This document shows positions 433 to 45,312 of a stretch of 64,000 bases of DNA, in pieces. A program made the translations under genes and the position numbers. Source of the DNA: Isurus oxyrinchus (lineage: Eukaryota); contig JANJGN010000009.1 in the NCBI GenBank assembly GCA_026770705.1, positions 163,804,001 through 163,868,000 of the forward strand, in the 5' to 3' direction. Position 1 is the stretch's first letter, and each line of letters opens with the position of its first letter. Under the pieces are notes generated by a model. The model was not told the DNA's origin. It searched no databases and was given only the letters and a program-made list of their open reading frames with translations.

Positions 433-747
433 TTTTAGGTGCATTGTGGGCAAAAGAGAGAGTAACAGGAGTTGTGGGAAGAGCGATCACAATAGAATGT
501 CACTATGATGCGTGGAGGTACAAGTCACATATAAAATATTGGTGTCGCGGCTGGACTCGCCAGTGTAATGTTGTAGCATCGACAAATTGGCCAAATGGAA
601 GAATATCGATCACAGATAACAAGTCACAAGGATTATTTATTGTTACTATGGAGAATCTTCACTCAGGAGATACAGGATGGTACAGCTGTGGTATTGAAGC
701 AACTGGCCACGATCCAATGTTTAATGTAAAGCTACAAATATCTTACG
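433..747 (+). CDS. Gene A V-set Ig exon (CD300/pIgR-type)
   Basis: Acceptor ctcag|TT and donor G|gtacat. Translation GALWAKERVTGVVGRAITIECHY...KYWCRGWTRQC...DTGWYSC has the B/F Cys pair, the C-strand Trp and the extra C-C' Cys pair typical of CD300/pIgR/TREM V domains. Confidence 0.93.
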
Positions 748-3700
748 GTACATTTCTTACTGTTTTTCTTTATTACTCTCGACTGAAATGTCTGCTCAAT
801 GTTTTATCTGGGAGGAAACATGACAGCTCCGACATCCCGAGGCTCCACAGCAATGCAGAGTCTTAAAGGTAAAGGGCAGAGGTCGGGAAATCCAACTCAT
901 GTTACCCAAACCCAATTCATGGCCTGTCCAACATGTCAGAGTTGAACTTTACAAGTGAACTAAACGGAAATTGAGAAGTTGTTTTGATGGTAAAAGAAGC
1001 CTCTTTATTAATTGTTGAGACATTGGGCTGGATATTCAGCCTCAAAGCGGGTAGGGGGAATTCGGAAAATTCCCCGCTCGGCCTTGGAAGAAAGTGCCCA
1101 CAAAGGTGGGATTCCCATTGCTGGGAGCTGTGCCCGGGCTGCAGTCTGGCCAGCCACACCAGGAAGAAATGCAGAGGCAGCCACAGGGGCTGCCGGCTGC
1201 GGAGACGGGCTGTTTAAAAGGCCCCTCCTTAATGCCCTTGGACTTTGTAACAGCTAAACTCAAAACACAAAGGCCCTTCACCCCTCACCCCTCACAGCCC
1301 ACAAAGGGGGTGGATGTGAGGGGAAAATTTGTCATGAGGGGGCTTGGAGGTGGGTGGAAGTGTACAGCTTGAAGTCAGGAGCATGAGGGGGTATAAGGCG
1401 TGGGTATAGGGATAGAGGGGGAACGAAGGGCCAAGCGGGTTGGATGGGGGTGTGACTTGACATAGCGGGCATGAGATGCACCTTTTGAACTTAGCTGTTA
1501 AAAGATCCCCTCATGCAGACCAGTGTTTACAGCTCCTCTGAGGGGCTTTGGATTACGACTCATTCAAAACCTGGCCCGAGTCCATGAAAATTGCAGAGGA
1601 GTCGGACGTCACTTTGGTCTGAAGGCTGCACAAAGCACAGGGTAGAGGCCCTGGACTGAGACACCAGCCTTTATCTTGTACAGAAAGTGTTCACATGTGA
1701 GTGACATGAACATTGCTCATCAAAACAAGGAGCGATAGGCAGGGAGACATTCTTTGGAGTTTATTGACAATAATGAACAGTATGTACAAGTGATTAACAC
1801 CCGTGCCCAGGACATGAAACTACATCTCCTCAACCAGGCGGTGTCTGGCGGCACCGTCGAGACGTTCCGTGCTCGGTGGGTGACCACGGGTGTTGGGGTC
1901 CTTTATCCAGCCTCTTAATCACATTTTGGTTTGATGTTGTAAGTTTCCTTTAAATCATGTCTTTGGTTTTGCAGTGACCCTAACCTAGGGGCTGCGTTTT
2001 ATATTATCCCTCATTTTGTTAATTTAGTTTATTGGGTTGGCTTTAAAAGAGCTACATCTTCTCAACTTTCCTAATCCTCCCGCTACATCTTGGTGCTCCG
2101 CAGACATCCACAGTGGAGGTAAAGACAGTCTGCTGACTGCTATGCTCTGTCTGTGATAACTTTGGCGGGCGTCCTCTGGAGGCCTGAGGCCTGGAGGGCC
2201 CCGGCTTCCTTTCGAGGTCCTACTGTGTGGCATTAGCACCCTCCATGTCCTGTGGACTGGGAGCTGTCAAGGTCACAGTAAGAGGGGAGTTACCAGGATG
2301 AATGGCCCCGGAGGGTACAAATGTTGATCCTTCTCGCTATGGGTACCCAATGGCCATTGGCTGAATCCTTGAGGAGCAGGGGTAGCTGGAGTGAGATCAA
2401 GCTGCCTGCACCCCTCTCGCATATACACTGTCAGGGGCCAACTATGCATCAGCAATGGAGTTCAGCCCCGCAGCAGTGTAGGAACGATGCCCTGGACCAA
2501 CGTCTCCATGGCAGCTGCCATCCTACCAGTGTTGACCTCGGTGCATTGACATGCCGGCGCTATCACCTCAGAGTGCAGGCGGACGGACTCCTCCATTGTG
2601 CCTTGCAATCTGAGGGGTGCAGCAGATATCCCTTCCTGATGTTCCCGCGTTGGCCTTTCCAGCTCCAGCAACTGTGACATGACCAAATCCAGAAACGCGT
2701 CACCTGACTCAACCTCAGCAAATTTATGGCCTCCAGCTGCCCACTGAGTGCCGGACACCTGGGAAGCCCCTGCCGCTGCCAGCTGTGGATCAGGCAGTGC
2801 GATTTGCTCACCAGCTGTGACCCTGAGTCTACTCTAAAGCTAGATCTCACCGAGGGGTGTGCCTCTGCGCTGGTGGAGGGTGAGGGTGAGGGCAGTGACG
2901 GTACATCAAGGAGGGTCCCTCCAGGTTCCTCTTCAGAGATTTCTTTGGGGATTACTTGGTGTCCCTGGGTCTCCATCGGCTGTTACCCAGATGTGCGTGT
3001 GGAAGCAAGTGGAAATATTTTGTGCATGGCAGTGGCCTGTGAAACAGGACACATCACTCACAGCATGGTTGTCTGATGGATGTTGCACTGCTGGACCCTC
3101 ACTTGGCTGAGGACCGCCGACCTCACCATTAGCACAGGATTGGTCCAGGCCGTTGCCGGCCAGCTGGATGGCCCTGTTTACAAAATACTAGTACTGTTCA
3201 GGAACATGATGTTCATATTTTCATACATGTCGCTGAATTTGTCAGTCACATTTACGCCTCTATTATCAACCAAAGAGCGGGATTGTCCCCGATTTGCACT
3301 AAGTGCGTTAGTGGGCGGGGGAATCGATGTTTTACCCACCGGCCACAATGGGGGGTTTTCAGGCCGCATCGTCCCAAACCCAACGCATTAGTTATGCATT
3401 CCCGGGAAACACACCATTTCCATGGTGGGTGGGATCTCATTCACCCCAAACACCATCACTTCACTGCTTCATCAGGCCCAGCACCATATGTAAAGTCCAG
3501 CCTCGTGCACACATCTCAGTGTTTCCAACCCAGGACCACTGCAGGGCAGATATCCCCAAGAGGCAAAAAGACTGTAGCTCCCAGGTTTAGTGAGCTGTCA
3601 CTGTAACACATTGTGTACACTGTGGGGGCCCTGCTGTGATGTCCTCTACTCCCACTCTGGCTGCAGTATGGACAGCGCTGTGACCAACCAGGCCTGGGAG

Positions 3701-6700
3701 GCGGGGGCAGCGGTGGTATACCCACTGAATTTTATTAAGTTAACCCTCACTGTCAGATAATGTAGACAGTATGAAAGTGTGGATGAGAAACACTTAGAAA
3801 CTGTCCTTGCTGGATGGAAACAAATGCTGGAGAGAATGGAAATTTCAAAATGAAATGAGTGGATGCCTGATTGTTTTAGAGAATGAAATGCAGGTACAAC
3901 GAATTTTTTAGGGATCTGAGGAGAGGGCTATCTTGCAATATGATGAAGTATAGAATATTGAGATTTTTAATTCAATTTGTTTCACACTTTTTGGTCACCA
4001 TATTAACTGAAAATTTTACTTAATTGAGAGATGGTCATCATCTAATCGTTTACTAATTGTGTTTAATTGTATGCAGTGGTGGCATTAATTGGTGATTCAC
4101 TTGTGCACCTATAAACAGATGCAGACTGAAACTGCGGGTGGTGGATTTGATTAGATTCACACAGTAAACAGCACTTTAAAACAGTTCCACAAGTCTTAAC
4201 CTATCTAACCTCAGAGCTAATCTGTCTCTTTTCTGTTCAGCAACGAACACTGTAGATTTAAAAAGCTATAGAAGTCCAATAATTTTACCACACAGTGCTT
4301 TTACATTGGGGTGTCCACTGACAGCAACTGGGTCTTCAGATCTGGGCCTTGTTCACACTGTCTCCTGGGAGTTCTGACCAGCTACCCTGCTGTCTTCAGG
4401 GAGATCTGGCCAACCATCCTGCTGTGTTCTGGGATATCTAAGCAGCTACGCCCTCACATAGGCTTCAGTATTCCCTTAAATGTGTTTCTTCTCTTTCATC
4501 TCTCTTTGTCGTACCCAGTCTGTTCAGAAATGCTTTTTTCCCAGGATTGATTAAATCAATCTTTACTTTAATTCTTAGACTTGTAAAAACAAACTTACCC
4601 TATCTTTATGTCACTTCATGACACCTTTTTACAACCTGCATATATCCCCCTTTGAACTAAAACAACTCAGTTCAAACTATTCCTGTTATTGCTTCATGTA
4701 CAAATCTGTTGAAGTTCTTTTTTGTTTATTAACATATCAAAACCACATCTTATTGTTGACTTTTGACCCTATCCACTGATGAGGCAGTCCACGTCATGGA
4801 ACCATAACCTTAAATCTGGAGATAGGCTCGTCAGGGATGTCAGGAATCACTTCTTCACGCAAAGTATAGTGGAAATCAGGAACACTCTCCTCAAAAAAGC
4901 TCTTTAGCTCAATTGAAAATTTCAAAACTGAATGACAGATTTTATCTGGTAGCAATATTCGGGTTATGGGACCCCGGTAGGTAAATGGACAGAAGATACT
5001 GGTCAGTTGGGATTTAATTGAATTGTGGAACAGGCTGAAGGGGCTGCATGTCCGAATCCCTTTTCCATGTTCTGGAGCCCCAGTTAATTTTTCAGTGGTC
5101 TGGGCCTTGTGAGTAACAATGTGCTGTGAAACAAGCTCACAAACAGTTAGCATTTCAAAGAGACACTTTCCAATCACCAGGCAAACTGTGACCTGTGTTG
5201 TTTCAGAGTACAGTTTGTGACAGTGAAAGCAGTGAAGGCCTGCCAAACCTCACTAAAAATATTGGTGAAAGTGTCACTTTTCTCTGGCTAATCCCTTGAC
5301 CAAAGAGGGAATTTTAATTCCCCTCCCCCATCCTGCATCGTGTTGAGGCATGATGGGATTTGCTGGATCCAGAACCTTCTCCAGCACGGCTTGTGATCCA
5401 GGAGACACACGAAAGCTTCACCCCCACCCCCAGGCAAATGTTTTATACAATTTCTCCCTCCCCATGATTGGCCAATCCTGCCCCAAGCAGCAAAGTCACC
5501 CTGACTCCCTCCTCGCTGCTGTGCTCCGAGGCAACATTCCCACCAATTTCCAAACTTTTACCGTAACTTTCCTACTTGGAAACCAGCCAAACTTTCAATC
5601 AGTGTGCAAGAATTCTGGTGAGATTTTGCTGTTAAATTCGGCACAAACTCAACATTCCTGGTATTTCCAGCTTTCTCACCACCCCACACACAGTCCCCCC
5701 TCTCGTCTCCACGTACCAGGGTTGAAGTGTTCTATCGCAGCATGCAGAGAACCAGAGCCAATCACATTTACATTCTTATCCAAAGCTACAAAACATGTAA
5801 CCGATATCTGACAACATTTTGCCCTCATTTTACCCTTTGCTTTTCTAAGATTCTCTCCAACTAATTCACATTCAACTCACAAACAATGAAACAGCATTGG
5901 AGGCTCACTACCAGCTACGAAGAGATATTGTTCACAATGATTTTCATGTTAACATACTCTCAGTATCATAGCTGCTGTTCTGATCTGGAGACCTGATTTG
6001 TTCTGATATAATGGCTGAAAGGGTAACTCAGGCCTCTAAGAGGATGGAGAGATATGGGGATGGATTTTTAAAAAGTATGGGGTCAGGATTAGAGATGGGT
6101 GGGTATGAAATTTGACACCGCTGGTCTCCATGCCAATTTACCATTACAATCTCAAGCCCGAAACATTTAGAAAGCGGGTGGCTTGCAGTCAAGTGGTGGG
6201 CAGCTAACTTAGGAAATAACATTTACCAAAGGGGCCAATTAAAGACCCATTCCTGCACCCACTGGGATTTCATTCAGCAATGCTAGCAGACCACATTGCC
6301 CCTTCAGGATCATGGCCCGGCAGCTGCCGGGTTTTGAAACATAAAATAAACTTACCTGGACTTTCCCCTTGCTGTCTCCATGCTCAGGTCAGCAACTCCC
6401 ACCTCACCTGGTGAGGCCCTCTAGCATCAGGAATGCGCCCACTGTCCCTGATTGGATGGTGAGCCCAGTTCCAGGCTTTTGATTGGCTGGAACATTGAAA
6501 ATTGCAGTGGGCATGCCTAAAGAATGGTGAATGGTGTCAGGACCTGAAACTATCTCCCATGTCCAGTTCCCAAACCCAAATTTAACATCCACCCCATAGA
6601 GTGGTAGATGTGTTGGTGAGATTCCAACATGGCAGAGCCTGGCTGAGATGAAGTGCAAAGTTTGAAGACTATTTGATTATTAAATGTTCAGTATCTGAAT

Positions 6701-9700
6701 GTTTCTTTCTTTCCAACAGAACCCGTGTCTGTTCCTGTGCTTAGATTTTCATCACCAGCAAATGTCTCATGTTCTGGGGGTTCAGTGTCCGTCTCCTGTG
6801 AGTCTGTCCAGGGATCTCTTCCCATTCCGTACACATGGTATGAAAAGAACCTGTCTGAAGATTCAAAGATCTCTGACACCAATAAACTGGATCTACATTG
6901 TCAATCCTTCAAACAGCAACATCATCAATATTACTGCACAGCCTCAAATAATCAGGGAGTAAAATCCAGTGATACTGTCACTGTTAACTTAACACTCATG
7001 AATGTAACAACGAAAAGCTGCAGTTATGTGATACAAATTGGAAACATTGGTAAGTGTTACTTTCTACAAACAATGTGGCGAATGAATGTTTTAAATTCAT
7101 GTCTATCCAAACTGGTCACTGGTTCAGTTCCTTCAGTTTATCTGAGAAATTGCAACTGGCCAAATTCACTCTCTCTGGTTCCTCAAACATTCTGAACAAG
7201 GTCACTAAGTTGCATTTTTCATGAAAAATGGACAGGATCAGAAAATATCCCCAAAACATGCAAAAATATTGCAGAATCTCCAATAAACCCATCGAATCAA
7301 AATAGCATTTGATTGACAGAGCTTTCATAAAGCAATTTGTCTATTTCCAGCAGATGGAATTGTGAAATGCAACCTCCAACTGTTGTGTCCTAGTTTGGGA
7401 AGGATATCACTGATAGAATAGAGAAGAATTGAATTAAAATGAACCCTTGGATGAGAGGTTTTAGTCATGAGGAAAGTATCATCACAACTGAGGTGAATGA
7501 CCAGCTGGAGGACGTGGAAATTGTTAGAAATTTGGATAAGGTAACTCTAACTATTTCCACTAGTCAGTGAGTCAGCAACAAGAGAGCATTAACTTTAAAA
7601 TTATCACTAAAAGGACAAAGGGAGAAATTTGGAGAATTTTATTGATGCAAACTGTTTTTAGGACATGGAATGCCCAACTGAAATAAGTTTACAAACAAAT
7701 TTAATAATAGATTTTAAAAGGGAAACAAATGTATGAGGGTGTGGGAAAAGGACAATGAAATGGAATTAAATGAGGAGATCATTCAGAGAACCAGCATTCG
7801 AGTGATGGGCTGAATTCCCTCCCCTGTGTTGTAAAAATTCCATCACTCCAGACAAAATCTCAACTTATCCTGTCTAAAAAATTAACTATTCCCTCCCCAT
7901 AAAACAATGACCCTGGTTCTGAAACAAGGAGGACTTTAGCCTATTTGAATGTCGCGGTTCAATTTTCTGCAGAGTGGGTGCAGCATGTTCACCGAGAAAC
8001 ACCAACATGGGCACAAAACAAAGAGAATCACATTTTCACCTGAGCAGCAGGAGACAGGAATTTACATATGCAAATATATTGCCTCTGGTCATGTGGTCTC
8101 TTGCCTCAGTTGTCAGGGAAGAAGGGTGGAATTTTACACCCCCATTGCGGCAGGGACTGGGCTGTAAAATGCAGCCAGCCATTCTAAACTCCATGCACTC
8201 CAGCAGGACCATAAAATCCCACTGTCACAAGGCTCTGAGCAAAGGCTGTCAGCAGCAGGTAGAAATTACACCTGTAAACTGTGTTTGTACTGGAGTTGTC
8301 AGCAGGGACTCAGTTGCACTCTGACATTTGATGCCAGTCTTTTGTAGTTACAAGTTCCCCTTAAGAGTTAAAATTCGGGCTGATACCATGATCCAGCACT
8401 GAGGTAGTGCTATACTGGTGGTGGTGCTGCTGTGTAGATGTGGTGTTAAACTGAGGATCCACATCCCCCTTAGGTAGATGTAAACAATTCCAGGGTATTA
8501 TTCACAGAATAGGGAAGTTCTCCTGGTGTCCTTGAAGCCTTTATTCCTCAACCAATACACACAAATTGGGAGCAGGAGCAGGCTATTTGGTCTTTTGAGC
8601 CTGTTAATGTCACTATAAAACAGATCATCTAGTGAATGTTTTACTGATGTTTGTGGGGCTTTACTGTGTACGAATTAACTTCCACGTTTCTTGATATTAA
8701 AACTGTGGCTTTACTTCAAAAAAGTACTTCATAGGCTCTGAAGCACTTTGGGATATCCCAAGGTTGTGAAAGGTGATGAATCAACACACATTGTTTCTTA
8801 CTTTTTGAAACAAACGATTTATTAAAATACATCTGAACCAATTATCTGAGTGCAAACGGCAGGGGGGAGGGGAGGGAGGAGCCAGTCCCAGCAGCAAGGT
8901 GGGTCATTATAATTAAATGGACAGAAAATCACTGGCAGGTTTGAGACATTCATGGTCTGTTGGTGAAGATTCTCATCTTTACTGCAAGCTCAGAAAACTG
9001 CCCCCAAAGGGCAGGAAGTGACCATTGCCTGTATTAGGATGTGACTGTTTAATGTGTTCACATGAAATTCATGTAATGAAAGTGTATCTCTGGATTGTAG
9101 TCCACCAACCTGAGCCCTTAACTGGCCCACTAGTAACTCTGTCCCACCAACTCTCAGAGATAGGAAAGAAAGTGGAATTACCAGTAAAGATAGATCACCA
9201 CCAAGTATCTGCGACCTCTCCACTTGTGACCAGAGAGGGGTAAATTACACAGAAATCAATTCTACCAGCCAGGCTTTTCCTCAATTAATGAGGTTCCATT
9301 TGACAATGATGCTCTTTCAGTTGACTACAAGTGAAAATGAGGTGAATCTGAATGTTATTCTTTTGCTTCAACAGGACCTGAGTATTTTTGTAACATTTCT
9401 ACAACAGTATCACCAACTACACATTCGACAAGTACAGATATAATTTCCACTACCATTCGAACCACACCTTCAGATCCCGAAAATGCTGAAAGGTACAATG
9501 TTCTCATGGATTGGCACTGCTTCCATATGTGAGAGATACGATTGGCCAAAGGAGTGAAAGTTGTTCATTAATTGTAAAGTAGCTCATCAGAATGGAAATG
9601 GTGGCTGGGTTTATATCATGCTGTTGTGTTAGCTTTTCAATGAGGGTGCATTTTTCTGTTGGAAAATACAAGCAAGGAGTGAGCTTTTCCATTGTGTTGC

Positions 9701-14915: not shown

Positions 14916-14949
14916 TAACACAACCGGCCTAATGGGCCAAATTTGTCTC

Positions 14950-22935: not shown

Positions 22936-22939
22936 AACA

Positions 22940-25240: not shown

Positions 25241-25244
25241 CGGA

Positions 25245-33779: not shown

Positions 33780-33830
33780 CCTTAATGTGGTTTCATGACC
33801 TGGCTTCCTGCTATCTTCTTCCTCATTTAA
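33780..33830 (+). promoter_or_regulatory. Putative myeloid-type proximal promoter of gene B (RUNX, ETS and PU.1-like sites)
   Basis: TGTGGTTT at 33786-33793, CTTCCTG at 33804-33810 and CTTCCTCATTT at 33818-33828, 100-145 bp upstream of the ATG. Motif match only. Confidence 0.5.
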
Positions 33831-33928
33831 ATTCCTTGTATCATTTATATTAGACACTTATTTCGATGTGAGAAACAAGAGCTGAGTGTCTGGAAACAAG
33901 TTCTGCCCTGATCTTTGTGAACAAAACA

Positions 33929-33965
33929 ATGTGGATTTTGATTCTCCTCATTAGTTCTCTGCCCG
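33929..33965 (+). CDS. Gene B signal-peptide exon
   Basis: acaATGTGG...CCCG|gtgagt, reading MWILILLISSLP. Phase 1 joins the V exon to give VSGALW. Identical coding copy at 62761. Confidence 0.88.
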
Positions 33966-36900
33966 GTGAGTGACAGCCAGAGCTGGATGTTCCGATATTC
34001 TGAGTTGGTTTAACTCTCGTGCGCTGGTTATACAGGAGATGTTTAAATATTTGGAGACATGCAAAGGCACAAGAGAGGTCTTGGGCACAGTGGGTAGTGT
34101 CTCTGTACCTGAGCCAGAAGCTCTGTGTTTGAGTCCCACTTCTGTTCTTGTTGAGAATGGAAGGCGCGTTCTAACCAGGACCAACAGATTGATTATCAAC
34201 CTGAAAATCTACCAACAGACCGAAGGCTGGTGGTAAGAGGGTTTGAGATCCGAGTCCAACATGATTGATGTGGAGTGGTGCCGCTCATTCTGTTGTCTCC
34301 GGAGGTTAGTGACCTGTTCCAGGGAAAACAAGCTTTGGAAAGCAAAAGTAAACATGTGCTTTGACTGCCGCATCCGTCTCTAGATGTGGGAAGTCTCCTA
34401 AGTCTAAAGGCACAAAATAGTCAGCAAAACCAAATGAGTAATAATTGTGAAGTATTTTATTACCCTGTGAATTAACTATCACAACATGGGAATAGTTAAC
34501 AAATAAACTGAACTGCATTATTAATTATGAATGATAAATAAAGGAGAATTAAATTTTCAGAAAGCTATGCAAGCAACATTTTGAAAATGAAAACCTTTTT
34601 TAATTGGTAATTTTCAATATAATCTGATGTCCAGTATAGACTGAAGACTGCAGCGGTAATAATCCCACAAATAAAACATGTCCCAAGTTTGTAAATATTT
34701 CTGTTTTTTAAAGTACAGTTGATGAAATATTGTGTTATGAGGCTCTCTCAGTGACACTGTTCCTCACTGGTAGATGGTTGGTCTACATCACTCTTCTCAT
34801 AAGTAGCCTTTTCTTGTTCATTCTTTAACTTTAAGAAACTAGATTTTGCTCATCACTCAGTATTGCCACCTCTCCATCATTTCGATGAATCTATTTTATA
34901 ACACACAATGTTAAACTCCCAGCCCCATCTGCTCTTAACCACCTCCCCAAAATATTTTGTGCCTCTAGCTGATCAATTTTATGCAGAATACTTGATGTAC
35001 TTATGGACAGGAAACTGAATCATGTTTCTGTCTGTTTGGCAATCTTCTTCTTTTCAATCCTTCCTCTTTCTGATCTGATCTCTTTCCCATTCCCTTTACA
35101 TCTGTAACTTTCCCTGTATCTTTTTCCTTTCCTTCATTTCTCTCTAGCCATTTAATTATTTTCAATCTCTCTTTTGTTATTTTAGTGCAAACTCTTTCCC
35201 CACAGCATGAGTTTCTCTCCCAGCAAGGCCATTGGTCTCATGAACGTTCAAGTCAAGGCATCCAAATCCCTACCTCAGGAATCCATCCATACTGTAAGGC
35301 CACCTATCACACAACCTCGCAAACTTTCAAGACCTTCAAATCCTACCTTTGGACATCCCTAACTCATTCAAGATCTGAACAACCCCTCCTGCAAGGACAC
35401 AACCCTACCCCGCACCCCACCCACCTCAGATCAGAGCAGGGAACTGTCGGCTCCTGTGACCACCTCCACACTGCTCCCCAGCCGACTGCAAATCAGGCCT
35501 GTCAATCAGACTGGTTTCTGGCTGTGGAACCTCCTGATGATGTCATACGCAGTCTAGGGTGAAACCCCAAAATATGAGGCAGAACCCCAATTTCCAGATT
35601 CCCTCACTCTACTAGCCCCTGCCAATATGTCAAGAAAATGCCCCAATTATCTCACGAGTATATCATTGTCTGAGACATGCTTTGGAACCACAGTGAGGCT
35701 CTGATAAGTGTCTATATGAATGATTACTCTCATCACAAACTTGATGGAATTTAACTCATTAAAATGCATCTGTTTGAATTAAGCAGTTATTTCCTGTTCA
35801 ATTCCTGAAATGTTGTCTCCTCAGTTTCAGGTGCATTGTGGGCAAAAGACAGAGTAACAGGAGTTGTGGGAAGAGCGATCACAATAGAATGTCACTATGA
35901 TGCACGGTACAAGTCACATATAAAATATTGGTGTCGCGGCTGGACTCGCCAGTGTAATGTTGTAGCATCGACAAATTGGCGAAATGGAAGAATATCGGTC
36001 ACAGATAACAAGTCACAAGGATTATTTATTGTTACTATGGAGGATCTTCACTCAGGAGATACAGGATGGTACAGCTGTGCTATTGAAGTAACTGGCCACG
36101 ATCCAATGTTTAATGTAAAGCTACAAATATCTTACGGTACATTTCTTACTGTTTTTCTTTATTACTCTCGACTGAAATGTCTGCTCAATGTTTTATCTGG
36201 GAGGAAACATGACAGCTCTGATATCCCGAGGCTCCACAGCAATGCAGAGTCTTAAAGGTAAAGGGCAGTGGTCGGGAAATCCAACTCATGTTACCCAAAC
36301 CCAATTCAAGGCCTGTCCAACATGTCAGAATTGAACTTTACAAGTGAACTAAACGGAAATTGAGAAGTTGTTTTGATGGTAAAAGAAGCCTCTTTATTAA
36401 TTGTTGAGACATTGGGCTGGATATTCAGCCTCAAAGCGGGTAGGGGGAATTCGGAAAATTCCCCGCTCGGCCTTGGAAGAAAGTGCCCACAAAGGTGGGA
36501 TTCCCATTGCTGGGAGCTGTGCCCGGGCTGCAGTCTGGCCAGCCACACCAGGAAGAAATGCAGAGGCAGCCACAGGGGCTGCCGGCTGCGGAGACGGGCT
36601 GTTTAAAAGGCCCCTCCTTAATGCCCTTGGACTTTGTAACAGCTAAACTCAAAACACAAAGGCCCTTCACCCCTCACCCCTCACAGCCCACAAAGGGGGT
36701 GGATGTGAGGGGAAAATTTGTCATGAGGTGGCTTGGAGGTGGGTGGAAGTGTACAGCTTGAAGTCAGGAGCATGAGGGGGTATAAGGCGTGGGTATAGGG
36801 ATAGAGGGGGAACGAAGGGCCAAGCGGGTTGGATGGGGGTGTGACTTGACATAGCGGGCATGAGATGCACCTTTTGAACTTAGCTGTTAAAAGATCCCCT

Positions 36901-39900
36901 CATGCAGACCAGTGTTTACAGCTCCTCTGAGGGGCTTTGGACTACGACTCAATCAAAACCTGGCCCGAGTCCTTGAAAATTGCAGAGGAGTCGGACGTCA
37001 CTTTGGTCTGAAGGCTGCACAAAGCACAGGGTAGAGGCCCTGGACTAAGACACCTGCCTTTATCTTGTATAGAAAGTGTTCACATGTGAGTGACATGAAC
37101 ATTGCTCATCAAAACAAGGAGCGATAGGCAGGGAGACATTCTTTGGAGTTTATTGACAATAATGAACAGTATGTACAAGTGATTAAAACCCGTGCCCAGG
37201 ATGTGAAACTACTTCTCCTCAACCACGCGGTGTCTGGCGGCACTGTCAAGACCTTCTGTGCTCGGTGGGTGACCACGGGTGTTGCGGTCCTTTATCCAGC
37301 CTCTTAATCACATTTTGGTTTGATGTTGTAAGTGTCCTTTAAATCATGTCTTTGGTTTTGCAGTGACCCTAACGTAGGGGCTGCGTTTTATATTATCCCT
37401 CATTTTGTTAATTTAGTTTATTGGGTTGGCTTTAAAAGAGCTACATCTTCTCAACTTTCCTAATCCTCCCGCTACATCTTGGTGCTCCGCAGACATCCAC
37501 AGTGGAGGTAAAGACAGTCTGCTGACTGCTATGCTCTGTCTGTGATAACTTTGGCGGGCACCCTCTGGAGGCCTGAGGCCTGGAGGGCCCCGGCTTCCTT
37601 TCGAGGTCCTACTGTGTGGCATTAGCACCCTCCTTGTCCTGTGGACTGGGAGCTGTCAAGGTCACAGTAAGAGGGGAGTTACCAGGATGAATGGCCCGGA
37701 GGGTACACATGTTGATCCTTCTCGCTATGGGTACCCAATGGCCATTGGCTGAATCCTTGAGGAGCAGGTGTAGCTGGAGTGAGATCGAGCTGCCTGCACC
37801 CCTCTCGCATACACACTGTCAGGGGCCAACTATACATCAGCAATGGAGTTCAGCCCCACAGCAGTGTAGGAACGATGCCCTGGACCAACGTCTCCATGGC
37901 AGCTGCCATCCTACCAGTGTTGACCTCGGTGCAGTGACATGCCGGCGCTATCACCTCAGAGTGCAGGCGGACGGACTCCTCCATTGTGCCTTGCAATCTG
38001 AGGGGTGCAGCAGATATCCCTTCCTGATGTTCCCGCGTTGGCCTTTCCAGCTCCAGCAACTGTGACATGACCAAATCCAGAAACGCGTCACCTGACTCGA
38101 CCTCAGCAAATTTATGGCCTCCAGCTGCCCACTGAGTGCCGGACACCTGGGAAGCCCCTGCCGCTGCCAGCTGTGGATCAGGCAGTGCAATTTGCTCACC
38201 AGCTGTGACCCTGAGTCTACTCTAAAGCTAGATCTCACCGAGGGGTGTGCCTCTGCGCTGGTGGAGGGTGTGGGTGAGGGCAGTGATGGTACAGCAAGGA
38301 GGGTCCCTCCAGGTTCCTCTTCAGAGATTTCTTTGGGGATTACTTGGTGTCCCTGGGTCTCCATCGGCTGTTACCCAGATGTGCGTGTGGAAGCAAGTGG
38401 AAATATTTTGTGCATGGCAGTGGCCTGTGAAACAGGACACATCACTCACAGCATGGTTGTCTGATGGATGTTGCACTGCTGGACCCTCACTTGGCTGAGC
38501 ACCGCCGACCTCACCGTCAGCACAGGATTGGTCCAGGCCGTTGCCGGCCAGCTGGATGGCTCTGTTTACAAAGTACTAGTACTGTTCAGGAACATGATGT
38601 TCATATTTTCATACATGTCGCTGAATTTGTCAGTCACATTTACGCCTCTATTATCAACCAAAGAGCGGGATTGTCCCCGATTTGCACTAAGTGCGTTAGT
38701 GGGCGGGGGAATTGATGTTTTACCCACCGGCCACAATGGGGGGTTTTCAGGCCGCATCGTCCCAAACCCAACGCATTAGTTATGCATTCCCGGGAAACAT
38801 ACCATTTCCATGGTGAGTGGGATCTCATTCACCCCAAACACCATCATTTCACTGCTTCATCAGGCCCAGCACCATATGTAAAGTCCAGCCTCGTGCACAC
38901 ATCTCAGTGTTTCCAACCCAGGACCACTGCAGGGAAGATATCCCCAAGAGGCAAAAAGACTGTAGCTCCCAGGTTTAGTGAGCTGTCACTGCAACACATT
39001 GTGTACACTGTGGGGGCCCTGCTGTGATGTCCTCTACTCCCACTCTGGCTGCAGTATGGACAGCGCTGTGACCAACCAGGCCTGGGAGGCGGGGGCAGCG
39101 GTGGTATACCCACTGAATTTTATTAAGTTAACCCTCACTGTCAGATAATGTAGACAGTATGAAAAGTGTGGATGAGAAACCCTTAGAAACTGTCCTTGCT
39201 GGATGGAAACAAATACTGGAGAGATTGGAAATTTCTAAATGAAATGAGTGGATGCCTGATTGTTTTATAGAATGAAATGCAGGTACAACAAATTTTTTAG
39301 GGATCTGAGGAGAGGGCTATCTTGCAATATGATGAAGTATAGAATATTGAGATTTTTAATTCAATTTGTTTCACACTTTTTGGTCACCATATTAACTGAA
39401 AATTTTATTTAAATGAGAGAAGGTCATCATCTAATCGTTTATTAATTGTGTTTAATTGTATGCAGTGGTGGCATTAATTGGTGATTCACTTGTGCACCTA
39501 TAAACAGATGCAGACTGAAACTGCGGGTGGTGGATTTGATTAGATTCACACAGTAAACAGCACTTTAAAACAGTTCCACATGTCTTAACCTATCTAACCT
39601 CAGAGCTAATCTTTCTCTTTTCCGTTCAGCAACGAACACTGTAGATTTAAAAAGCTATAGAAGTCCAATAATTTTACCACACAGTGCTTTCACATTGGGG
39701 TGTCCACTGACAGAAACTGTGTCTTCAGATCTGGGCCTTGTTCACACTGTCTCCTGGGAGTTCTGACCAGCTACCCTGCTGTCTTCAGGGAGATCTGGCC
39801 AACCATCCTGCTGTGTTCTGGGAGATCTAAGCAGCTACCCCCTCACATAGGCTTCAGTATTCCCTTAAATGTGTTTCTTCTCTTTCATCTCTCTTTGTCG

Positions 39901-42900
39901 TACCCAGTCTGTTCAGAAATGCTTTTATCCCAGGATTGATTAATTCAATATTTACTTTAATTCTTAGACTTGTAAAAACAAACTTACCCTATCTTTATGT
40001 CACTTCATGACACCTTTTTACAACCTGCATATATCCCCCTTTGAACTAAAACAACTTAATTCAAACTATTCCTGTTATTGCTTCATGTACAAAAATGTTG
40101 AAGTTCTCTTTTGTTCATTAACATATCAAAACCACTTCTTACTGTTGACTTTTGACCATATCCACTGATGAGGCAGTCCACGTTATGGAACCATAACCTT
40201 AAATCTGGAGATAGGCTCGTCAGGGATGTCAGGAAGCACTTCTTCACGCAAAGTATAGCGGAAATCAGGAACACTCTCCTCAAAAAAGCTCTTGAGCTCA
40301 GTTGAAAATTTCAAAACTGATTGACAGATTTTATCTGGTAGCAATATTCGGGTTATGGGACCCCGGTAGGTAAATGGACAGAAGATACTGGTCAGTTGGG
40401 ATTTAATTGAATTGTGGAACAGGCTGAAGGGGCTGCATGTCCAAATCCCTTTTCCATGTTCTGGAGCCCCAGTTAATTTTTCAGTGGTCTGGGCCTTGTG
40501 AGTAACAATGTGCTGTGAAACAAGCTCACAAACAGTTAGCATTTCAAAGAGACACTTTCCAATCACCAGGCAAACTGTGACCTGTGTTGTTTCAGAGTAC
40601 AGTTTGTGACAGTGAAAGCAGTGAAGGCCTGCCAAACCTCACTAAAAATGTTGGTGAAATTGTCACTTTTCTCTGGCTAATCCCTTGACCAAAGAGGGAA
40701 TTTTAATTCCCCTCCCCCATCCTGCATCGTGTTGAAGCATGATGGGATTTGCTGGATCCAGAACCTTCTCCAGCACGGCTTGTGATTCAGGAGACACACG
40801 AAAGCTTCACCCCCACCCCCAGGCAAATGTTTTATACAATTTCTCCCTCCCCATGATTGGCCAATCCTGCCCCAAGCAGCAAAGTCACCCTGACTCCCTC
40901 CTCGCTGCTGTGCTCCGAGGACAAATTCCCACCAATTTCTCCCATGTCCAGTTCCCAAACCCAAATTTAACATCCACCCCATAGAGTGGTAGATGTGTTG
41001 GTGAGATTCCAACATGACAGAGCCAGGCTGAGATGAAGTGCAAAGTTTGAAGAGTATTTGATTATTAAATGTTCAGTATCTGAATGTTTCTTTCTTTCCA
41101 ACAGAACCCGTGTCTGTTCCTGTGCTTAGATTTTCATCACCGCTAAATGTCTCATGTTCTGGGGGTTCAGTGTCCGTCTCCTGTCAGTCTGTCCAGGGAT
41201 CCCTTCCCATTCAGTACACATGGTATGAAAAGACTCTGTCTGAAGATTCAAAGATCTCTGACACCAAGAAACTGGATCTACATTGTCAATCCTTCAAACA
41301 GCAACATCATCAATATTACTGCACAGCCTCAAATAATCAGGGAGAAAAATCCAGTGACACTGTCACTGTTAACTTAACACTCATGAATGTAACAACGAAA
41401 AGCTGCAGTTATGTGATACAAATTGGAAACATTGGTAAGTGTTACTTTGTACAAACAATGTGACGAATGAATTATTTAAATTCATGTCTATCCAAACTGG
41501 TCACTGTTTCAGTTCCTTCAGTCAATCTGAGAAATTGCAACTGGCCAAATTCACTCTCTCTGGTTCCTCAAACATTCTGAACAAGGTCACTAAGTTGCAT
41601 TTTTCATGAAAAATGGACAGGATCAGAAAATATCCCCAAAACATGCAAAAATATTGCAGAATCTCCAACAAACCCATCGAATCAAAATAGCATTTGATTG
41701 ACAGAGCTTTCATAAAGCAATTTGTCTATTTCCAGCAGATGGAATTGTGAAATGCAACCTCCAACTGTTGTGTCCTAGTTTGGGAAGGATATCACTGATA
41801 GAATAGAGAAGAATTGAATTAAAATGAACCCTTGGATGAGAGGTTTTAGTCATGAGGAAAGTATCATCACAACTGAGGTGAATGACCAGCTGGAGGACGT
41901 GGAAATTGTTAGAAATTTGGATAAGGTAACTCTAACTATTTCCACTAGTCAGTGAGTCAGCAACAAGAGAACATTAACTTTAAAATTATCACTAAAAGGA
42001 CAAAGGGAGAAATTTGGAGAATTTTATTGATGCAAACTGTTTTTAGGACATGGAATGCCCAACTGAAATAAGTTTACAAACAAATTTAATAATAGATTTT
42101 AAAAGGGAAACAAATGTATGAGGGTGTGGGAAAAGGACAATGAAATGGAATTAAATGAGGAGATCATTCAGAGAACCAGCATTCGAGTGATGGGCTGAAT
42201 TCCCTCCCCATGTTGTAAAAATTCCATCATTCAAGACAAAATCTCAAATTATCCTGTATAAAAAATTAACTATTCCTTCCCCATGAAACAATGACCCTGG
42301 TTCTGAAACGAGGAGGACTTTAGCCTATTTGAATGTAGCGGTTCAATTTTCTGCAGAGTGGGTGCAGCATGTTCACCGAGAAACACCAACATGGGCACAA
42401 AACAAAGAGAATCACATTTTCACCTGAGCAGCAGGAGACAGGAATTTACATATGCAAATATATTGACTCTGGTCATGTGGTCTCTTGCCTCAGTTGTCAG
42501 GGAAGAAGGGTGGAATTTTACACCCCCATTGCGCCAGGGACTGGGCTGTAAAATGCAGCCAGCCATTCTAAACTCCATGCACTCCAGCAGGACCATAAAA
42601 TCCCACTGTCACAAGGCTCAGACCAAAGGCTGTCAGCAGCAGGTAGAAATTACACCTGTAAACTGTGTTTGTACTGGAGTTGTCAGCAGGGACTCAGTTG
42701 CACTCTGACATTTGATGCCAGTCTTTTGTAGTTACAAGTTCCCCTTAAGAGTTAAAATTCAGGCTGATACCACTGTCCAGCACTGAGGTAGTGCTATACT
42801 GGTGGTGGTGCTGCTGTGTAGATGAGGTATTAAACTGAGGATCCACATCCCCCTTAGGTAGATGTAAACAATTCCAGGGTATTATTCACAGAATAGGGAA

Positions 42901-45312
42901 GTTCTCCTGGTGTCCTTGAAGCCTTTATTCCTCAACCAATACACACAAATTGGGAGCAGGAGCAGGCCACTTGGTCTTTTGAGCCTGTTAATGTCACTAC
43001 AAAACAGATCATCTAGTGAATGTTTTACTGATGTTTGTGGGGCTTTATTGTGTAGGAATGAACTTCCACGTTTCCCAACATTAAAACTTTGGCTTTACTT
43101 CAAAAAAGTACTTCATAGGCTCTGAAGCACTTTGGAATATCCCAAGTTGTGAAAGGTGATGAATCAGCACAACTTGTTTCTTACTTTTTGAAACAAACCA
43201 TTTATTAAAATACATCTGAACCAATTATCTGAGTGCAAACTGCAGGGGGGGGAGGGGGAGGGAGGAGCCAGTCCCAGCAGCAAGGTGGTCATTATAATTA
43301 AATGGTCAGAAAATCACTGGCAGGTTTGAGACATTCATGGTCAGTGGGTGAAGATTCTCATCTTTACTGCAAGCTCAGAAAACTGCCCCCAAAGTGCAGA
43401 AAGTGACCATTGCCAGTATTAGGATGTGACTGTTTAATGTGTTCACATGAAATTCATGTCAAGAATGTGTATCTCTGGATTGCAGTCCACCAACTTGAGC
43501 CCTTACCATGCCCACTAGTAACTCTGTCCCACCAACTCTCAGATATAGGAAAGAAAGTGGAATTACCAGTAAAGATAGATCACCACCAAGTATCTGCGAC
43601 CTCTCCACTTGTGACCAGAGAGGGGTAAATTACACAGAAATCAATTCTACCAGCCAGGCTTTTCCTCAATTAATGAGGTTCCATTTGACAATGATGCTCT
43701 CTCAGTTGACTACAAGTGAAAATGAGGTGAATCTGAATGTTATTCCCTTGTGTCAACAGGACCTGAGTATTGTTGTGAAGCTTGTACAAGAGTATCACCA
43801 ACTACATATTTGACAAGTACAGATATAATTTCCACTACCAATCGAGCCACAACTTCAGATCCCGAAAATGCTGAAAGGTACAATGTTCTCATGGATTGGC
43901 ATTGCTTCCATATGTGAGAGATACAATTGGCCAAAGGAGTGAAAGTTGTTCATTAATTGTAAAGTAGCTCATCAGAATGGAAATGGTGGCTGGGTTTATA
44001 TCATGCTGTTGTGTTAGCTTCTTAATGAGGGTGCATTTTTCTGTTGGAAAATACAAGCAAGGAGTGAGCTTTTCCATTGTGTTGCCGCTCAGATGGTGTT
44101 TTTTGCCTTATTCACCTTGATTACTTCACCGCTAAGGTAACCTCACAGTGTGTGAGGAGTTGTACTTGTCAAACTTACCTTGCTGCTGTCTACACTGACA
44201 GAGTGGTTGTATTTGGGCGGATGAAAAGGAAGAATTAGCGTGATATATCTGCACATCCCTTGGTTTCACTAATGAGAGACATCTTGCAACTCTGGTCCCG
44301 TTTCCATATGATTAGCCTGAGCTGTCGACAATAAGTAGCAGAAATTGTAGTCCGATGTAAACACTCAGGAACCGGGTCTTTGAAGTTACAATGGTGATAA
44401 AGAGAAAACGCCAACTAAATGTCAAACAGAAAGAGGGACAGTTGGAAATGGACAGCAGGTATGTCCGCAGCTGTGGAGAAAATAAACACGTTCATGGTTT
44501 GGGTGCAGACACTTCTTCAGAATTCTAGTCCACACACGAAGCGAAGCAGGTCCACTCACCCCACAGATCCCAACTGAGCTGCTGAATGTTTCCAGAATCT
44601 TCTGTTTTCCATTCATATTTCTAGCACATGCAGTGCTCTTACTTTTATCCAGATTATTGTCAATGATTTAAAAAGTATTGAAAGTCTAGGGTCTGAATTT
44701 TCCGCTCGGCGGGGGTGGGGGTGGGGTAGAGCGGGAGCGAGCACGGGCAGCTGTGGACCCCATCGCCATCCACCATCGGGTTTTTGACGCCATTTTGCGC
44801 GGGCGGCCAATTTAGGCCATCCCAGCGTATTTCCCGGCTCCCGAGGATAGCGGCAGTGGGCGAGAAGCGGGGGGTGTGCACAGACAACCGGGTCCAATGG
44901 TGACCCAGCGGCCTGTTTAAATGAAGGCCTGGCAGCCTGTTCCAGCTGCTCACAATGGCCAGTGCAAAGAATTTTCACTTACAATTCCGCTTCGCCTTAC
45001 AGTTAGACATTATGGACATGCTAAAGAAATTTGCTTCGTTTGATTTTTATCTAATGATCATGAAGTTGATAAGTAGAACTTTAGTTGATTCTTTCAGCTA
45101 AAGTCCCTTGTCTACTTTATGTTGCTGCAAAAAATTACAGTGTAAAGCGGAGAGTCATGTTTCAAAAATGAAACAGTCTCATTTCATTTAAATGGTTTGA
45201 TATTTCTTCTCTTTTGCTCAGTTACATTATCTGGGATGTGATACGCTGGGTGCTCTTTACTCTCCTGGTGATTTGTGCTGTTTCGGGCACATGGTGTACG
45301 AGAAAATCTAAG
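33929..45312 (+). CDS. Gene B: activating-type CD300/pIgR-like Ig receptor; exons 33929-33965, 35825-36136, 41105-41434, 43760-43877, 45222-45312 (terminal exon uncertain)
   Basis: Five GT-AG exons total 888 nt = 296 aa in one frame: MWILILLISSLPVSGALW, V-Ig, C2-Ig, stalk, then a TM with Asp/Arg. Confidence 0.88.
35825..36136 (+). CDS. Gene B V-set Ig exon
   Basis: Paralogue of 433-747, 3 nt shorter, with the same splice sites and Cys/Trp pattern. Confidence 0.93.
41105..41434 (+). CDS. Gene B second Ig exon (C2-type)
   Basis: Paralogue of 6720-7049; 330 nt with intact splice sites. Confidence 0.92.
43760..43877 (+). CDS. Gene B stalk exon
   Basis: Reads GPEYCCEACTRVSPTTYLTSTDIISTTNRATTSDPENAE; 118 nt, phase 1-2. 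Confidence 0.85.
44689..44970. mobile_element. Truncated GC-rich Harbinger-type MITE at the cassette 3' breakpoint
   Basis: Starts GGGTCTGAATTTTCCG (same TIR class), is CpG-rich and is absent from copy 1. Confidence 0.6.
45222..45312 (+). CDS. Gene B transmembrane exon with Asp and Arg (activating type)
   Basis: Acceptor ttttgctcag|T and donor AAG|gtgaga. Reads SYIIWDVIRWVLFTLLVICAVSGTWCTRKSK; phase 2 matches the stalk exon. Confidence 0.85.

What the first reader, a model, noticed from the sequence alone, without database searches (positions are those of the whole stretch)
433..45312. Paired inhibitory/activating Ig receptors with near-identical ectodomains
Seen: genes A and B share V, C2 and stalk exons and their introns at high identity. 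A ends in a neutral TM and a tail with four Tyr motifs, while B has an unrelated TM exon containing Arg and no ITIM exon is visible after it. Established: this is the design of paired receptors (KIR, LILR/PIR, SIRP, Siglec-5/14, CD300), and CD300-related MDIR receptors with both signalling types are known from skate. Inference: this is a young or recently homogenised pair in a cartilaginous fish, possibly shaped by a pathogen ligand, with B as the activating counterpart of A.
Basis: partly seen in the sequence, partly recalled or inferred. Interest (0 to 1): 0.88.

Follow-up and report, generated by a model that had tools for sequence, protein, structure and literature searches.

The report
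Shark inhibitory/activating MDIR receptor gene pair
Two neighbouring shark immune-receptor genes share an almost identical outer (ligand-binding) half but carry opposite signalling ends, one inhibitory and one activating; it is a real, transcribed example of the known skate/shark MDIR family, not a new kind of system.

Summary
Window 1-10300 and 35392-44685 are 97.5% identical direct copies. Each carries a pIgR/CD300-type V exon, an FcRL-type C2 exon and a stalk exon.

- **Copy B** continues into an unrelated, phase-compatible TM exon with Arg. Spliced contigs from three runs (two samples, two studies) join 43877>45222. Two of those contigs also join 45312>49092.
It adds 13 residues without Tyr, a stop and AATAAA. 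So B is expressed and has no ITIM.

This is not a new kind. Both genes belong to the elasmobranch MDIR family: V is 62% and C2 60% identical to skate MDIR2, and B's TM is 57% identical to MDIR5. Both signalling modules are conserved in sharks and rays.

Ectodomain trees group activating and inhibitory forms by lineage, and A/B divergence falls into two strata (2.1% and 4.3%). I read this as recurrent homogenisation of a promoter-plus-ectodomain cassette. A third cassette starts at 54744.

Adaptor coupling, shared ligand and pathogen-driven selection are inferences only. The scan's own first-reader notes list similar genes nearby in this genome.

The parts
1..10300 (+). Cassette copy Q1: intron-1 end, V, C2 and stalk exons of gene A and their introns. 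The promoter and leader part lies before the window.
   Evidence: Self-BLAST and MAFFT: 97.5% identical to 35392-44685.
433..747 (+). Gene A V exon: pIgR/CD300-type V-set domain with the extra Cys pair, phase 1/1.
   Evidence: Splice sites. Pfam V-set 1.9e-10. PDB pIgR 4e-40 and CLM-1/CD300f 1.7e-16. 62% identical to skate MDIR2.
5549..6552 (+). 1004-bp stretch present in A's intron and absent from B.
   Evidence: Alignment gap. Flanks shown; no clear target-site duplication.
6720..7049 (+). Gene A C2 exon: FcRL-type Ig domain, phase 1/1.
   Evidence: Splice sites. Pfam Ig_2/Ig_3. PDB FcRL5 1e-48. 60% identical to MDIR2.
9375..9492 (+). Gene A stalk exon, phase 1/2: PEYFCNISTTVSPTTHSTSTDIISTTIRTTPSDPENAE.
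   Evidence: Splice sites. Aligned with B.
10989..11077 (+). Gene A TM exon, uncharged, phase 2/1.
   Evidence: Splice sites. Same TM in Cetorhinus P0004/P0026 and Heptranchias P0027.
13166..13218 (+). Gene A small cytoplasmic exon (G)PSCIPSQRRDKTLHDNQ, phase 1/0.
   Evidence: Only candidate with the right phase that matches homologues. P0026 reads ...QINKGTNSILSYRRDKTLHDNQELAAEEE. Splice sites cag|GT..CAG|gtaagg.
13849..14160 (+). Gene A last coding exon. Motifs: TVYANV (13873-13890), ITYAAV (13957-13974), VIYSGV (14044-14061), AIYATI (14134-14151), then the stop.
   Evidence: Sequence. 90% identical to the tail of Cetorhinus P0026. Collinear with the MDIR2 tail.
26796..35159 (+). Cassette part P1: upstream region, leader exon and intron 1 of gene B. 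Starts with a 27-bp minisatellite.
   Evidence: 96% identical to 54744-64000. Tandem repeat.
33929..33965 (+). Gene B leader exon, coding part MWILILLISSLP(V), donor GTGAGT, phase 1.
   Evidence: tblastn with shark homologues. Sequence.
35392..44685 (+). Cassette copy Q2: V, C2 and stalk exons of gene B with their introns.
35825..36136 (+). Gene B V exon, one codon shorter than A's.
   Evidence: Pfam V-set 7.7e-10.
41105..41434 (+). Gene B C2 exon.
43760..43877 (+). Gene B stalk exon. It has 12 differences from A, all nonsynonymous, and two extra Cys.
   Evidence: Covered without mismatch by spliced contigs of X1, X2 and X15.
45222..45312 (+). Gene B TM exon with Arg (WDVIRW...), phase 2/0.
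   Evidence: Joint 43877>45222 (GT..AG) in three runs. The motif is present in 41 elasmobranch proteins, including skate MDIR5.
49092..49258 (+). Gene B last exon: FQTLNGSDPQSLT, stop at 49131-49133, AATAAA at 49241-49246. Contigs end near 49258.
   Evidence: Joint 45312>49092 (GT..AG) in X2 and X15. Sequence and translation.
54744..64000 (+). Cassette part P2: upstream region and leader exon (62761-62797) of a third gene, whose V exon lies beyond the window.

Best explanation
[quoted passage not shown] Gene A is about 417 codons by exon arithmetic. It is an MDIR2-type inhibitory receptor with an uncharged TM and a tail carrying two canonical ITIMs plus TxYxxV and AxYxxI motifs. Gene B is 309 codons. 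It places a near-identical ectodomain on the ancient MDIR5-type module: a TM helix with an invariant Arg near its outer end and a short tail without Tyr.

Inferred mechanism: both bind the same or closely similar ligands through the V domain. A would recruit SH2 phosphatases through its phosphorylated ITIMs. B would signal by pairing its TM Arg with the Asp of an ITAM adaptor; an outer-leaflet Arg suggests an FcRgamma/CD3zeta-type adaptor.

The near-identity arises because a cassette of about 18 kb is copied or converted between cluster members. This cassette holds the upstream region, leader, V, C2 and stalk. The 3' signalling modules stay distinct.

Shown here: gene structures, B's transcription and splicing, family membership, the age of both modules, and mosaic divergence. 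Inferred: adaptor pairing, phosphatase recruitment and ligand sharing.
For: - **Duplication and exon models:**
- **Reading frames:** exon lengths sum in frame for both genes. B is 37+312+330+118+91+42 = 930 nt. A is 1254 nt if its leader is also 37 nt. These lengths match homologues of 416-418 aa.
- **B's transcription:** contigs of X1, X2 and X15 join 43877>45222 with 0 mismatches in the B-specific stalk. X2 and X15 go on from 45312 to 49092. All joints are GT..AG.
- **B's tail:** 13 residues with no Tyr, then stop and AATAAA.
- **Family membership:** skate MDIR2, MDIR3 and MDIR5 are among the hits. Direct BLASTP to MDIR2 gives 62% for V, 60% for C2 and a collinear tail; B's TM is 57% identical to MDIR5.
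- **Arg-TM module:** found in 41 shark and ray proteins, with Arg at the same position in all (R or K was allowed by the search pattern) and short Tyr-less tails.
- **ITIM module:** conserved in Cetorhinus, Carcharodon, Heptranchias and others.
- **Decoupling of ectodomain and signalling type:** C2 and V trees put A with B (SH-aLRT 96 and 97). They likewise pair activating with inhibitory forms within Heptranchias, catshark, carpet sharks and skate. Signalling type changes 12 times on each tree, against 14.1 and 12.5 for shuffled labels.
- **Two divergence strata:** 2.07% (1-8500) against 4.28% (8501-10300), Fisher P = 5e-7.
Against: - No functional data exist for any MDIR signalling step.
- The adaptor is unknown. 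One survey found no FcRgamma homologue in the shark data available in 2014 (PMC4016189). An FcRgamma-like gene noted elsewhere in this genome is an unchecked first-reader note.
- A's transcript was not examined, because the reads tool allowed one call. Its leader exon is outside the window.
- The runs are labelled RNA only by guess. The GT..AG intron-skipping joints are what argue for RNA.
- V and C2 differ at 7 residues each, four of them in the CDR-like loops of V. Ligand identity between A and B is therefore not assured.
- The trees rest on about 107 columns and many forks are unresolved.
Confidence: 0.75

Rival explanations
1. The similarity of A and B is neutral concerted evolution in a large tandem cluster (unequal crossing-over or gene conversion). 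There is no selection for a shared or pathogen-derived ligand. The 'pair' is then an accident of which neighbours were last homogenised, not a functional unit.
For: - dN/dS is 0.97 in V and 0.51 in C2. Nonsynonymous divergence in V and C2 (2.8-2.9%) is about the same as intron divergence (2.35%).
- A third cassette copy is present in the window.
- First-reader notes describe many more MDIR-like genes within several hundred kb (unchecked).
- The ectodomain trees carry almost no signal of signalling type.
Against: - Four of the eight V-exon differences lie in the loops that align with CDR1-3 of pIgR D1.
- The stalk exon shows 12 nonsynonymous and 0 synonymous changes: P = 0.03 under neutrality and P = 0.003 against the flanking intron.
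- Activating/inhibitory pairs with similar ectodomains recur in several lineages. Selection for pairing would also produce that pattern.
Confidence: 0.35
2. B is not an activating receptor. The Arg-TM module serves another purpose, such as assembly with a non-ITAM partner, retention or regulated surface expression, or ligand capture as a decoy.
For: - No ITAM adaptor has been shown for any MDIR.
- A 2014 survey reported no FcRgamma homologue in sharks (PMC4016189).
- The residue before the Arg is not conserved: Asp in 8 of 41, Lys in 21 of 41.
Against: - Arg sits at the same TM position in all 41 sequences, followed by Trp and a conserved hydrophobic face. This is the pattern of adaptor-coupled receptors.
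- Macaque activating KIR with a TM Arg couple to FCER1G (PMC8102735).
- The short tails carry no motif of their own.
Confidence: 0.15
3. A and B are two haplotypes, or a collapsed or expanded repeat, wrongly laid side by side by the assembler.
For: The 97.5% identity over 9.3 kb and an assembly gap at 56530-56874 show that this is a difficult region.
Against: - The copies continue into different, non-homologous 3' exons. Each 3' module has orthologues in other sharks and rays.
- B's own stalk variants are joined to the Arg-TM exon in transcripts without mismatch.
- Divergence is mosaic, with a 1-kb indel.
- Chromosome-level assemblies of other sharks carry both types on one chromosome: the same contig ids hold Cetorhinus P0004/P0005/P0026 and Carcharodon P0002/P0029.
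Confidence: 0.03

Closest known systems
Skate MDIR family (modular domain immune-type receptors; Cannon et al. 2006, Immunogenetics 58:362, PMID 16738934; cited in PMC3031540)
   Same: - Same V domain (62% to MDIR2) and same C2 domain (60%).
- Same ITIM-tail layout as MDIR2.
- Same Arg-TM module as MDIR5 (57%).
- Multigene family with activating and inhibitory members.
   Different: - Here the two signalling types sit on ectodomains that are 93-94% identical in protein, with introns 98% identical, 35 kb apart.
- B is a two-Ig activating form, whereas MDIR5 is a 501-aa protein with more Ig domains (two V-type and two C2-type stretches matched).
- I could not read the 2006 paper. What it says about genomic pairing is unknown to me.
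Mammalian CD300 (CMRF35-like) family and pIgR
   Same: - V domain with the extra disulfide: PDB CLM-1/CD300f 1.7e-16, pIgR D1/D5 4e-40 summed.
- CD300 also has ITIM members and charged-TM members.
   Different: - CD300 proteins have a single V domain and no FcRL-type C2 domain.
- Their activating members mostly use Lys or Glu in the TM.
- pIgR has five V-type domains and a transport function.
- The NCBI names 'CMRF35-like molecule 8' and 'pIgR-like' for shark homologues are automatic labels.
Primate KIR: activating forms made by recombining an ectodomain with another gene's TM/tail (macaque KIR3DS; PMC8102735)
   Same: - Near-identical ectodomains on an ITIM tail or on a TM with Arg and a short tail.
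- Origin by recombination within a tandem cluster.
- The Arg position suggests an FcRgamma-type adaptor.
   Different: The Ig domains are unrelated (C2/D-type only). The resemblance is convergent design, not homology. Ligands are known for KIR (MHC class I) but unknown here.
FcRL5 / FcRL family
   Same: The C2 exon matches the repeated FcRL5 Ig domains (1e-48 over six stretches).
   Different: FcRL proteins have no pIgR/CD300-type V domain, and their tails and TM are unrelated.

Membership tests
MDIR (elasmobranch modular domain immune-type receptors) | Sequence homology of the Ig domains to the named skate MDIR proteins | tested here: met
   V exon against MDIR2 (P0100): 62%, E 3e-45. C2 exon: 60%, E 8e-40. 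MDIR2, MDIR3 and MDIR5 are recovered in the same search as the shark homologues.
MDIR (elasmobranch modular domain immune-type receptors) | N-terminal V-type domain of the CD300/TREM/pIgR kind, with the extra intradomain Cys pair | tested here: met
   The CHYD...YWCRGWTRQC...YSC pattern. Best solved relatives are pIgR, CLM-1/CD300f, CMRF35-H and TREM2. The family description is in PMC3031540.
MDIR (elasmobranch modular domain immune-type receptors) | Family members of both signalling types: ITIM tails, and a charged TM with a short tail | tested here: met
   A tail: ITYAAV, VIYSGV, TVYANV, AIYATI. B: Arg in the TM and a 13-residue tail without Tyr. B's TM is 57% identical to MDIR5.
Paired receptors (functional sense: same ligand, opposite signals) | Highly similar ectodomains on opposite signalling modules, encoded by linked genes | tested here: met
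   In protein, V is 93% and C2 94% identical. The genes lie 35 kb apart on one strand.
Paired receptors (functional sense: same ligand, opposite signals) | Both genes expressed | tested here: inconclusive
B is shown by spliced contigs in three runs (two samples, two studies). A is intact, and close homologues are annotated as expressed gene models.
Paired receptors (functional sense: same ligand, opposite signals) | Shared ligand; ITIM recruits SHP-1/2; charged TM binds an ITAM adaptor | not testable with these tools
   This needs binding and signalling experiments.
CD300 family proper | Single V domain followed directly by stalk and TM | tested here: not met
   An FcRL-type C2 domain follows the V domain in both genes.
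pIgR proper | Several tandem V-type domains and a long transcytosis tail | tested here: not met
   There is one V domain only, and the tails are ITIM-type or 13 residues long.

The most novel reading that the evidence does not exclude
Throughout elasmobranchs, MDIR clusters keep two ancient signalling modules: an ITIM tail and an Arg-TM, both older than the shark-ray split. Onto these, clusters repeatedly re-deal a promoter-plus-ectodomain cassette, so each lineage regenerates matched inhibitory/activating pairs. The stalk exon lies in the older stratum and differs at 12 nonsynonymous and 0 synonymous sites with two extra Cys in B, so it may tune dimerisation or adaptor assembly. If true, paired-receptor dynamics of the KIR/LILR kind would be as old as jawed vertebrates, and could be studied in a family with a V domain of the lipid- and Ig-binding CD300/pIgR type.
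Probability: 0.45. Interest if true: 0.6.

Novelty: new member of a known kind. Interest (0 to 1): 0.45.

Why it matters
- Paired inhibitory/activating receptors are a hallmark of fast-evolving innate recognition in mammals. Little is documented for them in cartilaginous fish beyond the 2006 skate cDNAs.
- This locus gives a clean genomic example with exact exon models. It includes transcript proof for the activating member and a mapped recombination boundary in the intron before the TM exon (10300 / 44685).
- With the cross-species trees, it suggests that exchange of ectodomain cassettes between fixed signalling modules is a general habit of the family.
- It names concrete constructs for ligand and adaptor tests.
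- It does not reveal a new mechanism.

Tried and rejected
- **Hidden ITIM or second TM exons:** I looked for a hidden ITIM exon after B, and for a relic Arg-TM exon after A, by tblastn at E<=10. None was found.
- **A's tail splicing:** joining A's TM exon directly to the tail exon fails. The phase gives a stop after about 30 codons. An intermediate exon was needed, and was found by phase plus homology.
- **The 76% copy at 51301-52452:** I considered it a third gene. No V or C2 exon lies beside it and its ORFs hit no Pfam family. It is a repeat or an old relic.
- **Literature:** searches for MDIR, shark paired receptors and shark FcRgamma/DAP12 gave only secondary mentions. The primary MDIR paper and a review were not held.
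- **Species:** not established. The run ids are coded. The best protein matches are lamniform sharks at 78-90%, and I did not pursue this further.
- **Complex prediction and structure prediction:** not used. No adaptor sequence was at hand, and the domains already have clear solved relatives.
- **X7 alternative joint:** an alternative joint 45312>46386 in run X7 (27 letters on one side, into a very high-depth repeat) was judged too weak to count as an isoform.
Full report

A self-comparison of the window shows two long direct duplications.
- 1-10300 matches 35392-44685 at 97.9% and 96.8% in two blocks. The blocks are split by 1004 bp present only in the first copy, at 5549-6552.
- 26796-35159 matches 54744-64000 at 96%.

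The order along the window is Q1, unique DNA, P1-Q2, unique DNA, P2. This is a tandem array of a P-Q cassette of about 18 kb, followed each time by different DNA. An earlier first-reader note on this same stretch (s1-869616) said the same.

Inside Q, three exons are shared, with canonical splice sites and Ig-superfamily phases:
- V: 433-747 / 35825-36136
- C2: 6720-7049 / 41105-41434
- Stalk: 9375-9492 / 43760-43877

Pfam calls V-set and Ig_2/Ig_3 for them. tblastn of every exon against the window finds exactly two V, two C2 and two stalk exons. It finds one copy each of A's TM, A's tail and B's TM.

**2. Gene models**

Gene A:
- After the stalk (which ends in phase 2) comes the TM exon 10989-11077. 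Its helix, LIYIVLGVLGGILVVFAVSLLLY, is uncharged, and the exon ends in phase 1.
- A phase-and-splice-site screen gave a few candidates. One of them, 13166-13218, encodes (G)PSCIPSQRRDKTLHDNQ. It matches the basking-shark protein P0026, which reads ...QINK GTNSILSYRRDKTLHDNQ ELAAEEE... and is 90% identical to A's tail.
- The tail carries TVYANV, ITYAAV, VIYSGV and AIYATI. Two are canonical ITIMs, one is ITSM-like, and one is a C-terminal YxxI.
- A's leader exon lies before the window.

Gene B:
- The leader exon is at 33929-33965 (MWILILLISSLP, donor GTGAGT).
- The TM exon 45222-45312 enters in phase 2, exactly as A's does. Both form the same split Ser codon AG|T.
- It encodes YIIWDVIRWVLFTLLVICAVSGTWCTRKSK.

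Exon lengths add up in frame for both genes. B is 930 nt, or 309 codons plus stop. A is 1254 nt if its leader is also 37 nt. That gives 417 codons, like the 416-418-aa homologues.

**3. Transcript evidence**

- Contigs from three runs of one organism label (X1 and X2 from one sample, X15 from another study) join 43877 to 45222 across a GT..AG intron. They have no mismatch in B's stalk exon, which differs from A's at 12 positions.
- Two of these contigs (X2, X15) continue from 45312 to 49092, again GT..AG. They end near 49258, 12 nt after an AATAAA at 49241-49246.
- The new exon reads FQTLNGSDPQSLT-stop.
- The X2 contig is 1117 nt long, with 740 nt ahead of the stalk. That length equals leader + V + C2 plus about 60 nt of 5' UTR, so it probably represents a full-length B mRNA. 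This last point is inference, since the upstream part lay outside the stretch.

The joint exists, and the exon B splices to downstream has no Tyr motif.

A fourth run (X7, a second organism label) shows the same TM exon joined to a stalk with nine differences. I take this to be an orthologue or paralogue.

The runs are RNA only by the tool's guess. The intron-skipping joints are the evidence that they are RNA. A's transcripts were not examined.

**4. What family is it?**

- The V exon's closest solved relatives are pIgR domains, CLM-1/CD300f, CMRF35-H and TREM2.
- The C2 exon's closest solved relative is FcRL5.
- Protein searches were made exon by exon, and with the full-length Heptranchias homologue P0027. 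They return some 130 elasmobranch proteins.
- NCBI labels these 'CMRF35-like molecule 8', 'polymeric immunoglobulin receptor-like' or 'Fc receptor-like protein 5'. Among them are the clearnose-skate proteins named Modular domain immune-type receptor 2, 3 and 5.
- Direct BLASTP gives V 62% and C2 60% to MDIR2, a collinear ITIM tail, and B's TM 57% to MDIR5.
- MDIRs are described as a multigene family of activating and inhibitory receptors related to CD300, TREM and pIgR (PMC3031540, citing Cannon et al. 2006; I could not read the primary paper).

A and B are therefore new members of a known family. They are not CD300 or pIgR proper: those membership tests fail on domain architecture.

**5. Age of the signalling modules**

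- The pattern W-x-V-x-R-W-[VLG]-[LF]-F, followed by a conserved hydrophobic stretch and a basic stop-transfer, occurs in 41 of the retrieved proteins. They come from carpet sharks, catsharks, houndshark, cow shark, skates, stingrays, sawfish and mantas.
- Arg is at the same position in all 41. The search pattern allowed R or K.
It is Asp in 8, Lys in 21, and Ser, Thr or Asn in the rest.
- The tails after this TM are short and Tyr-free. Examples are LLNESDHH, SLNESDSH and KRRDESDPH. B's LNGSDPQS is recognisably the same exon.
- A's TM and ITIM tail are likewise found in Cetorhinus, Carcharodon, Heptranchias, Heterodontus, catsharks and others.

Both modules therefore predate the shark-ray split. 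B is not a recent degenerate derivative of A.

**6. Origin of the near-identity**

Trees of the C2 and V domains (about 107 columns, so only partly resolved) place A and B as sisters, with SH-aLRT 96 and 97. Their nearest relative is a white-shark protein. The same trees pair activating with inhibitory forms within Heptranchias (99/98), small-spotted catshark (95, C2), carpet sharks (98/99) and skate MDIR3/MDIR5 (99).

I then counted one membrane-proximal domain per protein. Signalling type changes 12 times on each tree, against 14.1 and 12.5 for shuffled labels. The ectodomain tree thus carries almost no memory of the signalling end.

Within the window, A/B divergence is heterogeneous (chi-square P = 1.4e-4). 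It falls into two strata: 2.07% over 1-8500 and 4.28% over 8501-10300 (Fisher P = 5e-7). The boundary of similarity lies at 10300/44685, in the intron before the TM exons.

My reading is an older duplication or exchange reaching to that intron, followed by a more recent conversion of the 5' 8.5 kb that includes V and C2. 'Recently homogenised' therefore fits better than 'young'.

**7. Selection**

- Exons differ more than non-exon DNA: 4.2% against 2.35%, P = 0.003.
- This excess comes mostly from the stalk. V has dN/dS 0.97 and C2 has 0.51. Their nonsynonymous divergence (2.8-2.9%) is about the intron rate.
- The stalk has 12 nonsynonymous and 0 synonymous changes: P = 0.03 for that split, and P = 0.003 against the flanking intron. 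It turns PEYFCNIS into PEYCCEAC, which adds two Cys and removes one N-glycosylation site. This agrees with note s1-869676.
- Several of B's stalk states recur in a basking-shark inhibitory protein (NRATTSDPEN in P0026). Several of A's recur in a white-shark protein (RTTPSDPEN in P0002). So part of this difference is probably inherited from older paralogues rather than newly selected.
- Four of the eight V-exon differences fall in the loops that align with CDR1-3 of pIgR D1 (alignment): the Trp deletion in DAWRYK, Pro to Arg in NWPNG, and Gly to Ala and Ala to Val in CGIEATG. These loops are the ligand-contact surface in pIgR and CD300 (established knowledge, not tested here).

The data allow ligand-driven divergence but do not demonstrate it. 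The pathogen hypothesis remains speculation.

**8. Mechanism (inferred)**

By analogy with ITIM receptors, A should recruit SHP-1, SHP-2 or SHIP after Src-kinase phosphorylation. B should need a partner chain with a TM Asp. An Arg near the outer end of the helix is the arrangement seen in receptors that use FcRgamma or CD3zeta, such as macaque activating KIR (PMC8102735).

A 2014 survey found no FcRgamma in the shark data then available (PMC4016189). An unchecked first-reader note reports an FcRgamma-like gene elsewhere in this genome (s1-863553). The adaptor is therefore open.

**9. Rivals**

- **Haplotype misassembly.** This is very unlikely. The 3' ends are different and each is conserved in other species. 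Transcripts join B's stalk to B's TM. Divergence is mosaic. Other chromosome-level shark assemblies carry both types on one chromosome.
- **Neutral concerted evolution without functional pairing.** This remains a serious alternative for why the copies are alike.
- **A non-activating role for the Arg-TM module.** This cannot be excluded without experiments.

**10. Context and verdict**

First-reader notes place further MDIR-like activating and inhibitory genes from 260 kb before to 500 kb beyond this window (unchecked). The pair therefore sits in a large cluster, and the scan has met the same kind of gene repeatedly in this genome.

The finding is real, the models are now complete for B and nearly so for A, and the paired architecture is confirmed with transcript support. 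It is a new member of a known family showing a known design. It is moderately interesting for comparative immunology, chiefly for the evidence that cassette exchange between fixed signalling modules recurs across elasmobranchs.

Noticed in passing
window 26887-27445 and 54744-55360: A 27-bp minisatellite (20.7 copies, 90% matches) marks the 5' edge of each P cassette. It is open in several frames, including a Ser/Thr-rich frame on the minus strand. It may be the recombination-prone edge of the duplicated unit, or simply a minisatellite.
   Followed up: partly
window 51301-52452: A 76% copy of an intron-1 stretch (2052-3179 in A, 37441-38567 in B), with no V or C2 exon nearby and no Pfam hit in its ORFs. 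It is either a dispersed repeat or the relic of an older cassette.
   Followed up: partly
window 62761-62797: The leader exon of a third gene (MWILILLISSLP, identical to B's) lies in cassette copy P2. Its V exon must lie just beyond the window end, so the array has at least three cassette copies.
   Followed up: partly
window 43759-45312, run X7: In a second organism label, a contig joins the same Arg-TM exon (1 mismatch) to a stalk exon with 9 differences. The TM exon is thus better conserved than the stalk between close relatives or paralogues.
   Followed up: no
window 46384-46600: Contig depth is very high here (up to about 12,000 in X7). There is also a weak alternative joint 45312>46386. 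It looks like an abundant transcribed repeat downstream of B's TM exon, possibly exonised now and then.
   Followed up: no
window 9493-9538 and 43878-43923: If the stalk donor is not used, the frame runs on for 15 codons (YNVLMDWHCFHM-stop). A whale-shark gene model (P0011) ends in a similar read-through (ERYDILCFDSLCEMNNIV). This could be a conserved soluble isoform or a shared annotation artefact.
   Followed up: no
window 59080-61476 (+), 22590-23003 (-), 16682-17161 (+): LINE debris: an endonuclease-like ORF, weak and below Pfam's own cut-off (Exo_endo_phos 1.2e-3, 19.1 bits against a cut-off of 24.5), and a reverse-transcriptase fragment (RVT_1 3.6e-8). One element lies inside the duplicated P cassette, so it was inserted before the duplication.
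   Followed up: partly
window 56530-57480: An assembly gap (345 N) is followed by a long CA-rich microsatellite, inside cassette copy P2.
   Followed up: no
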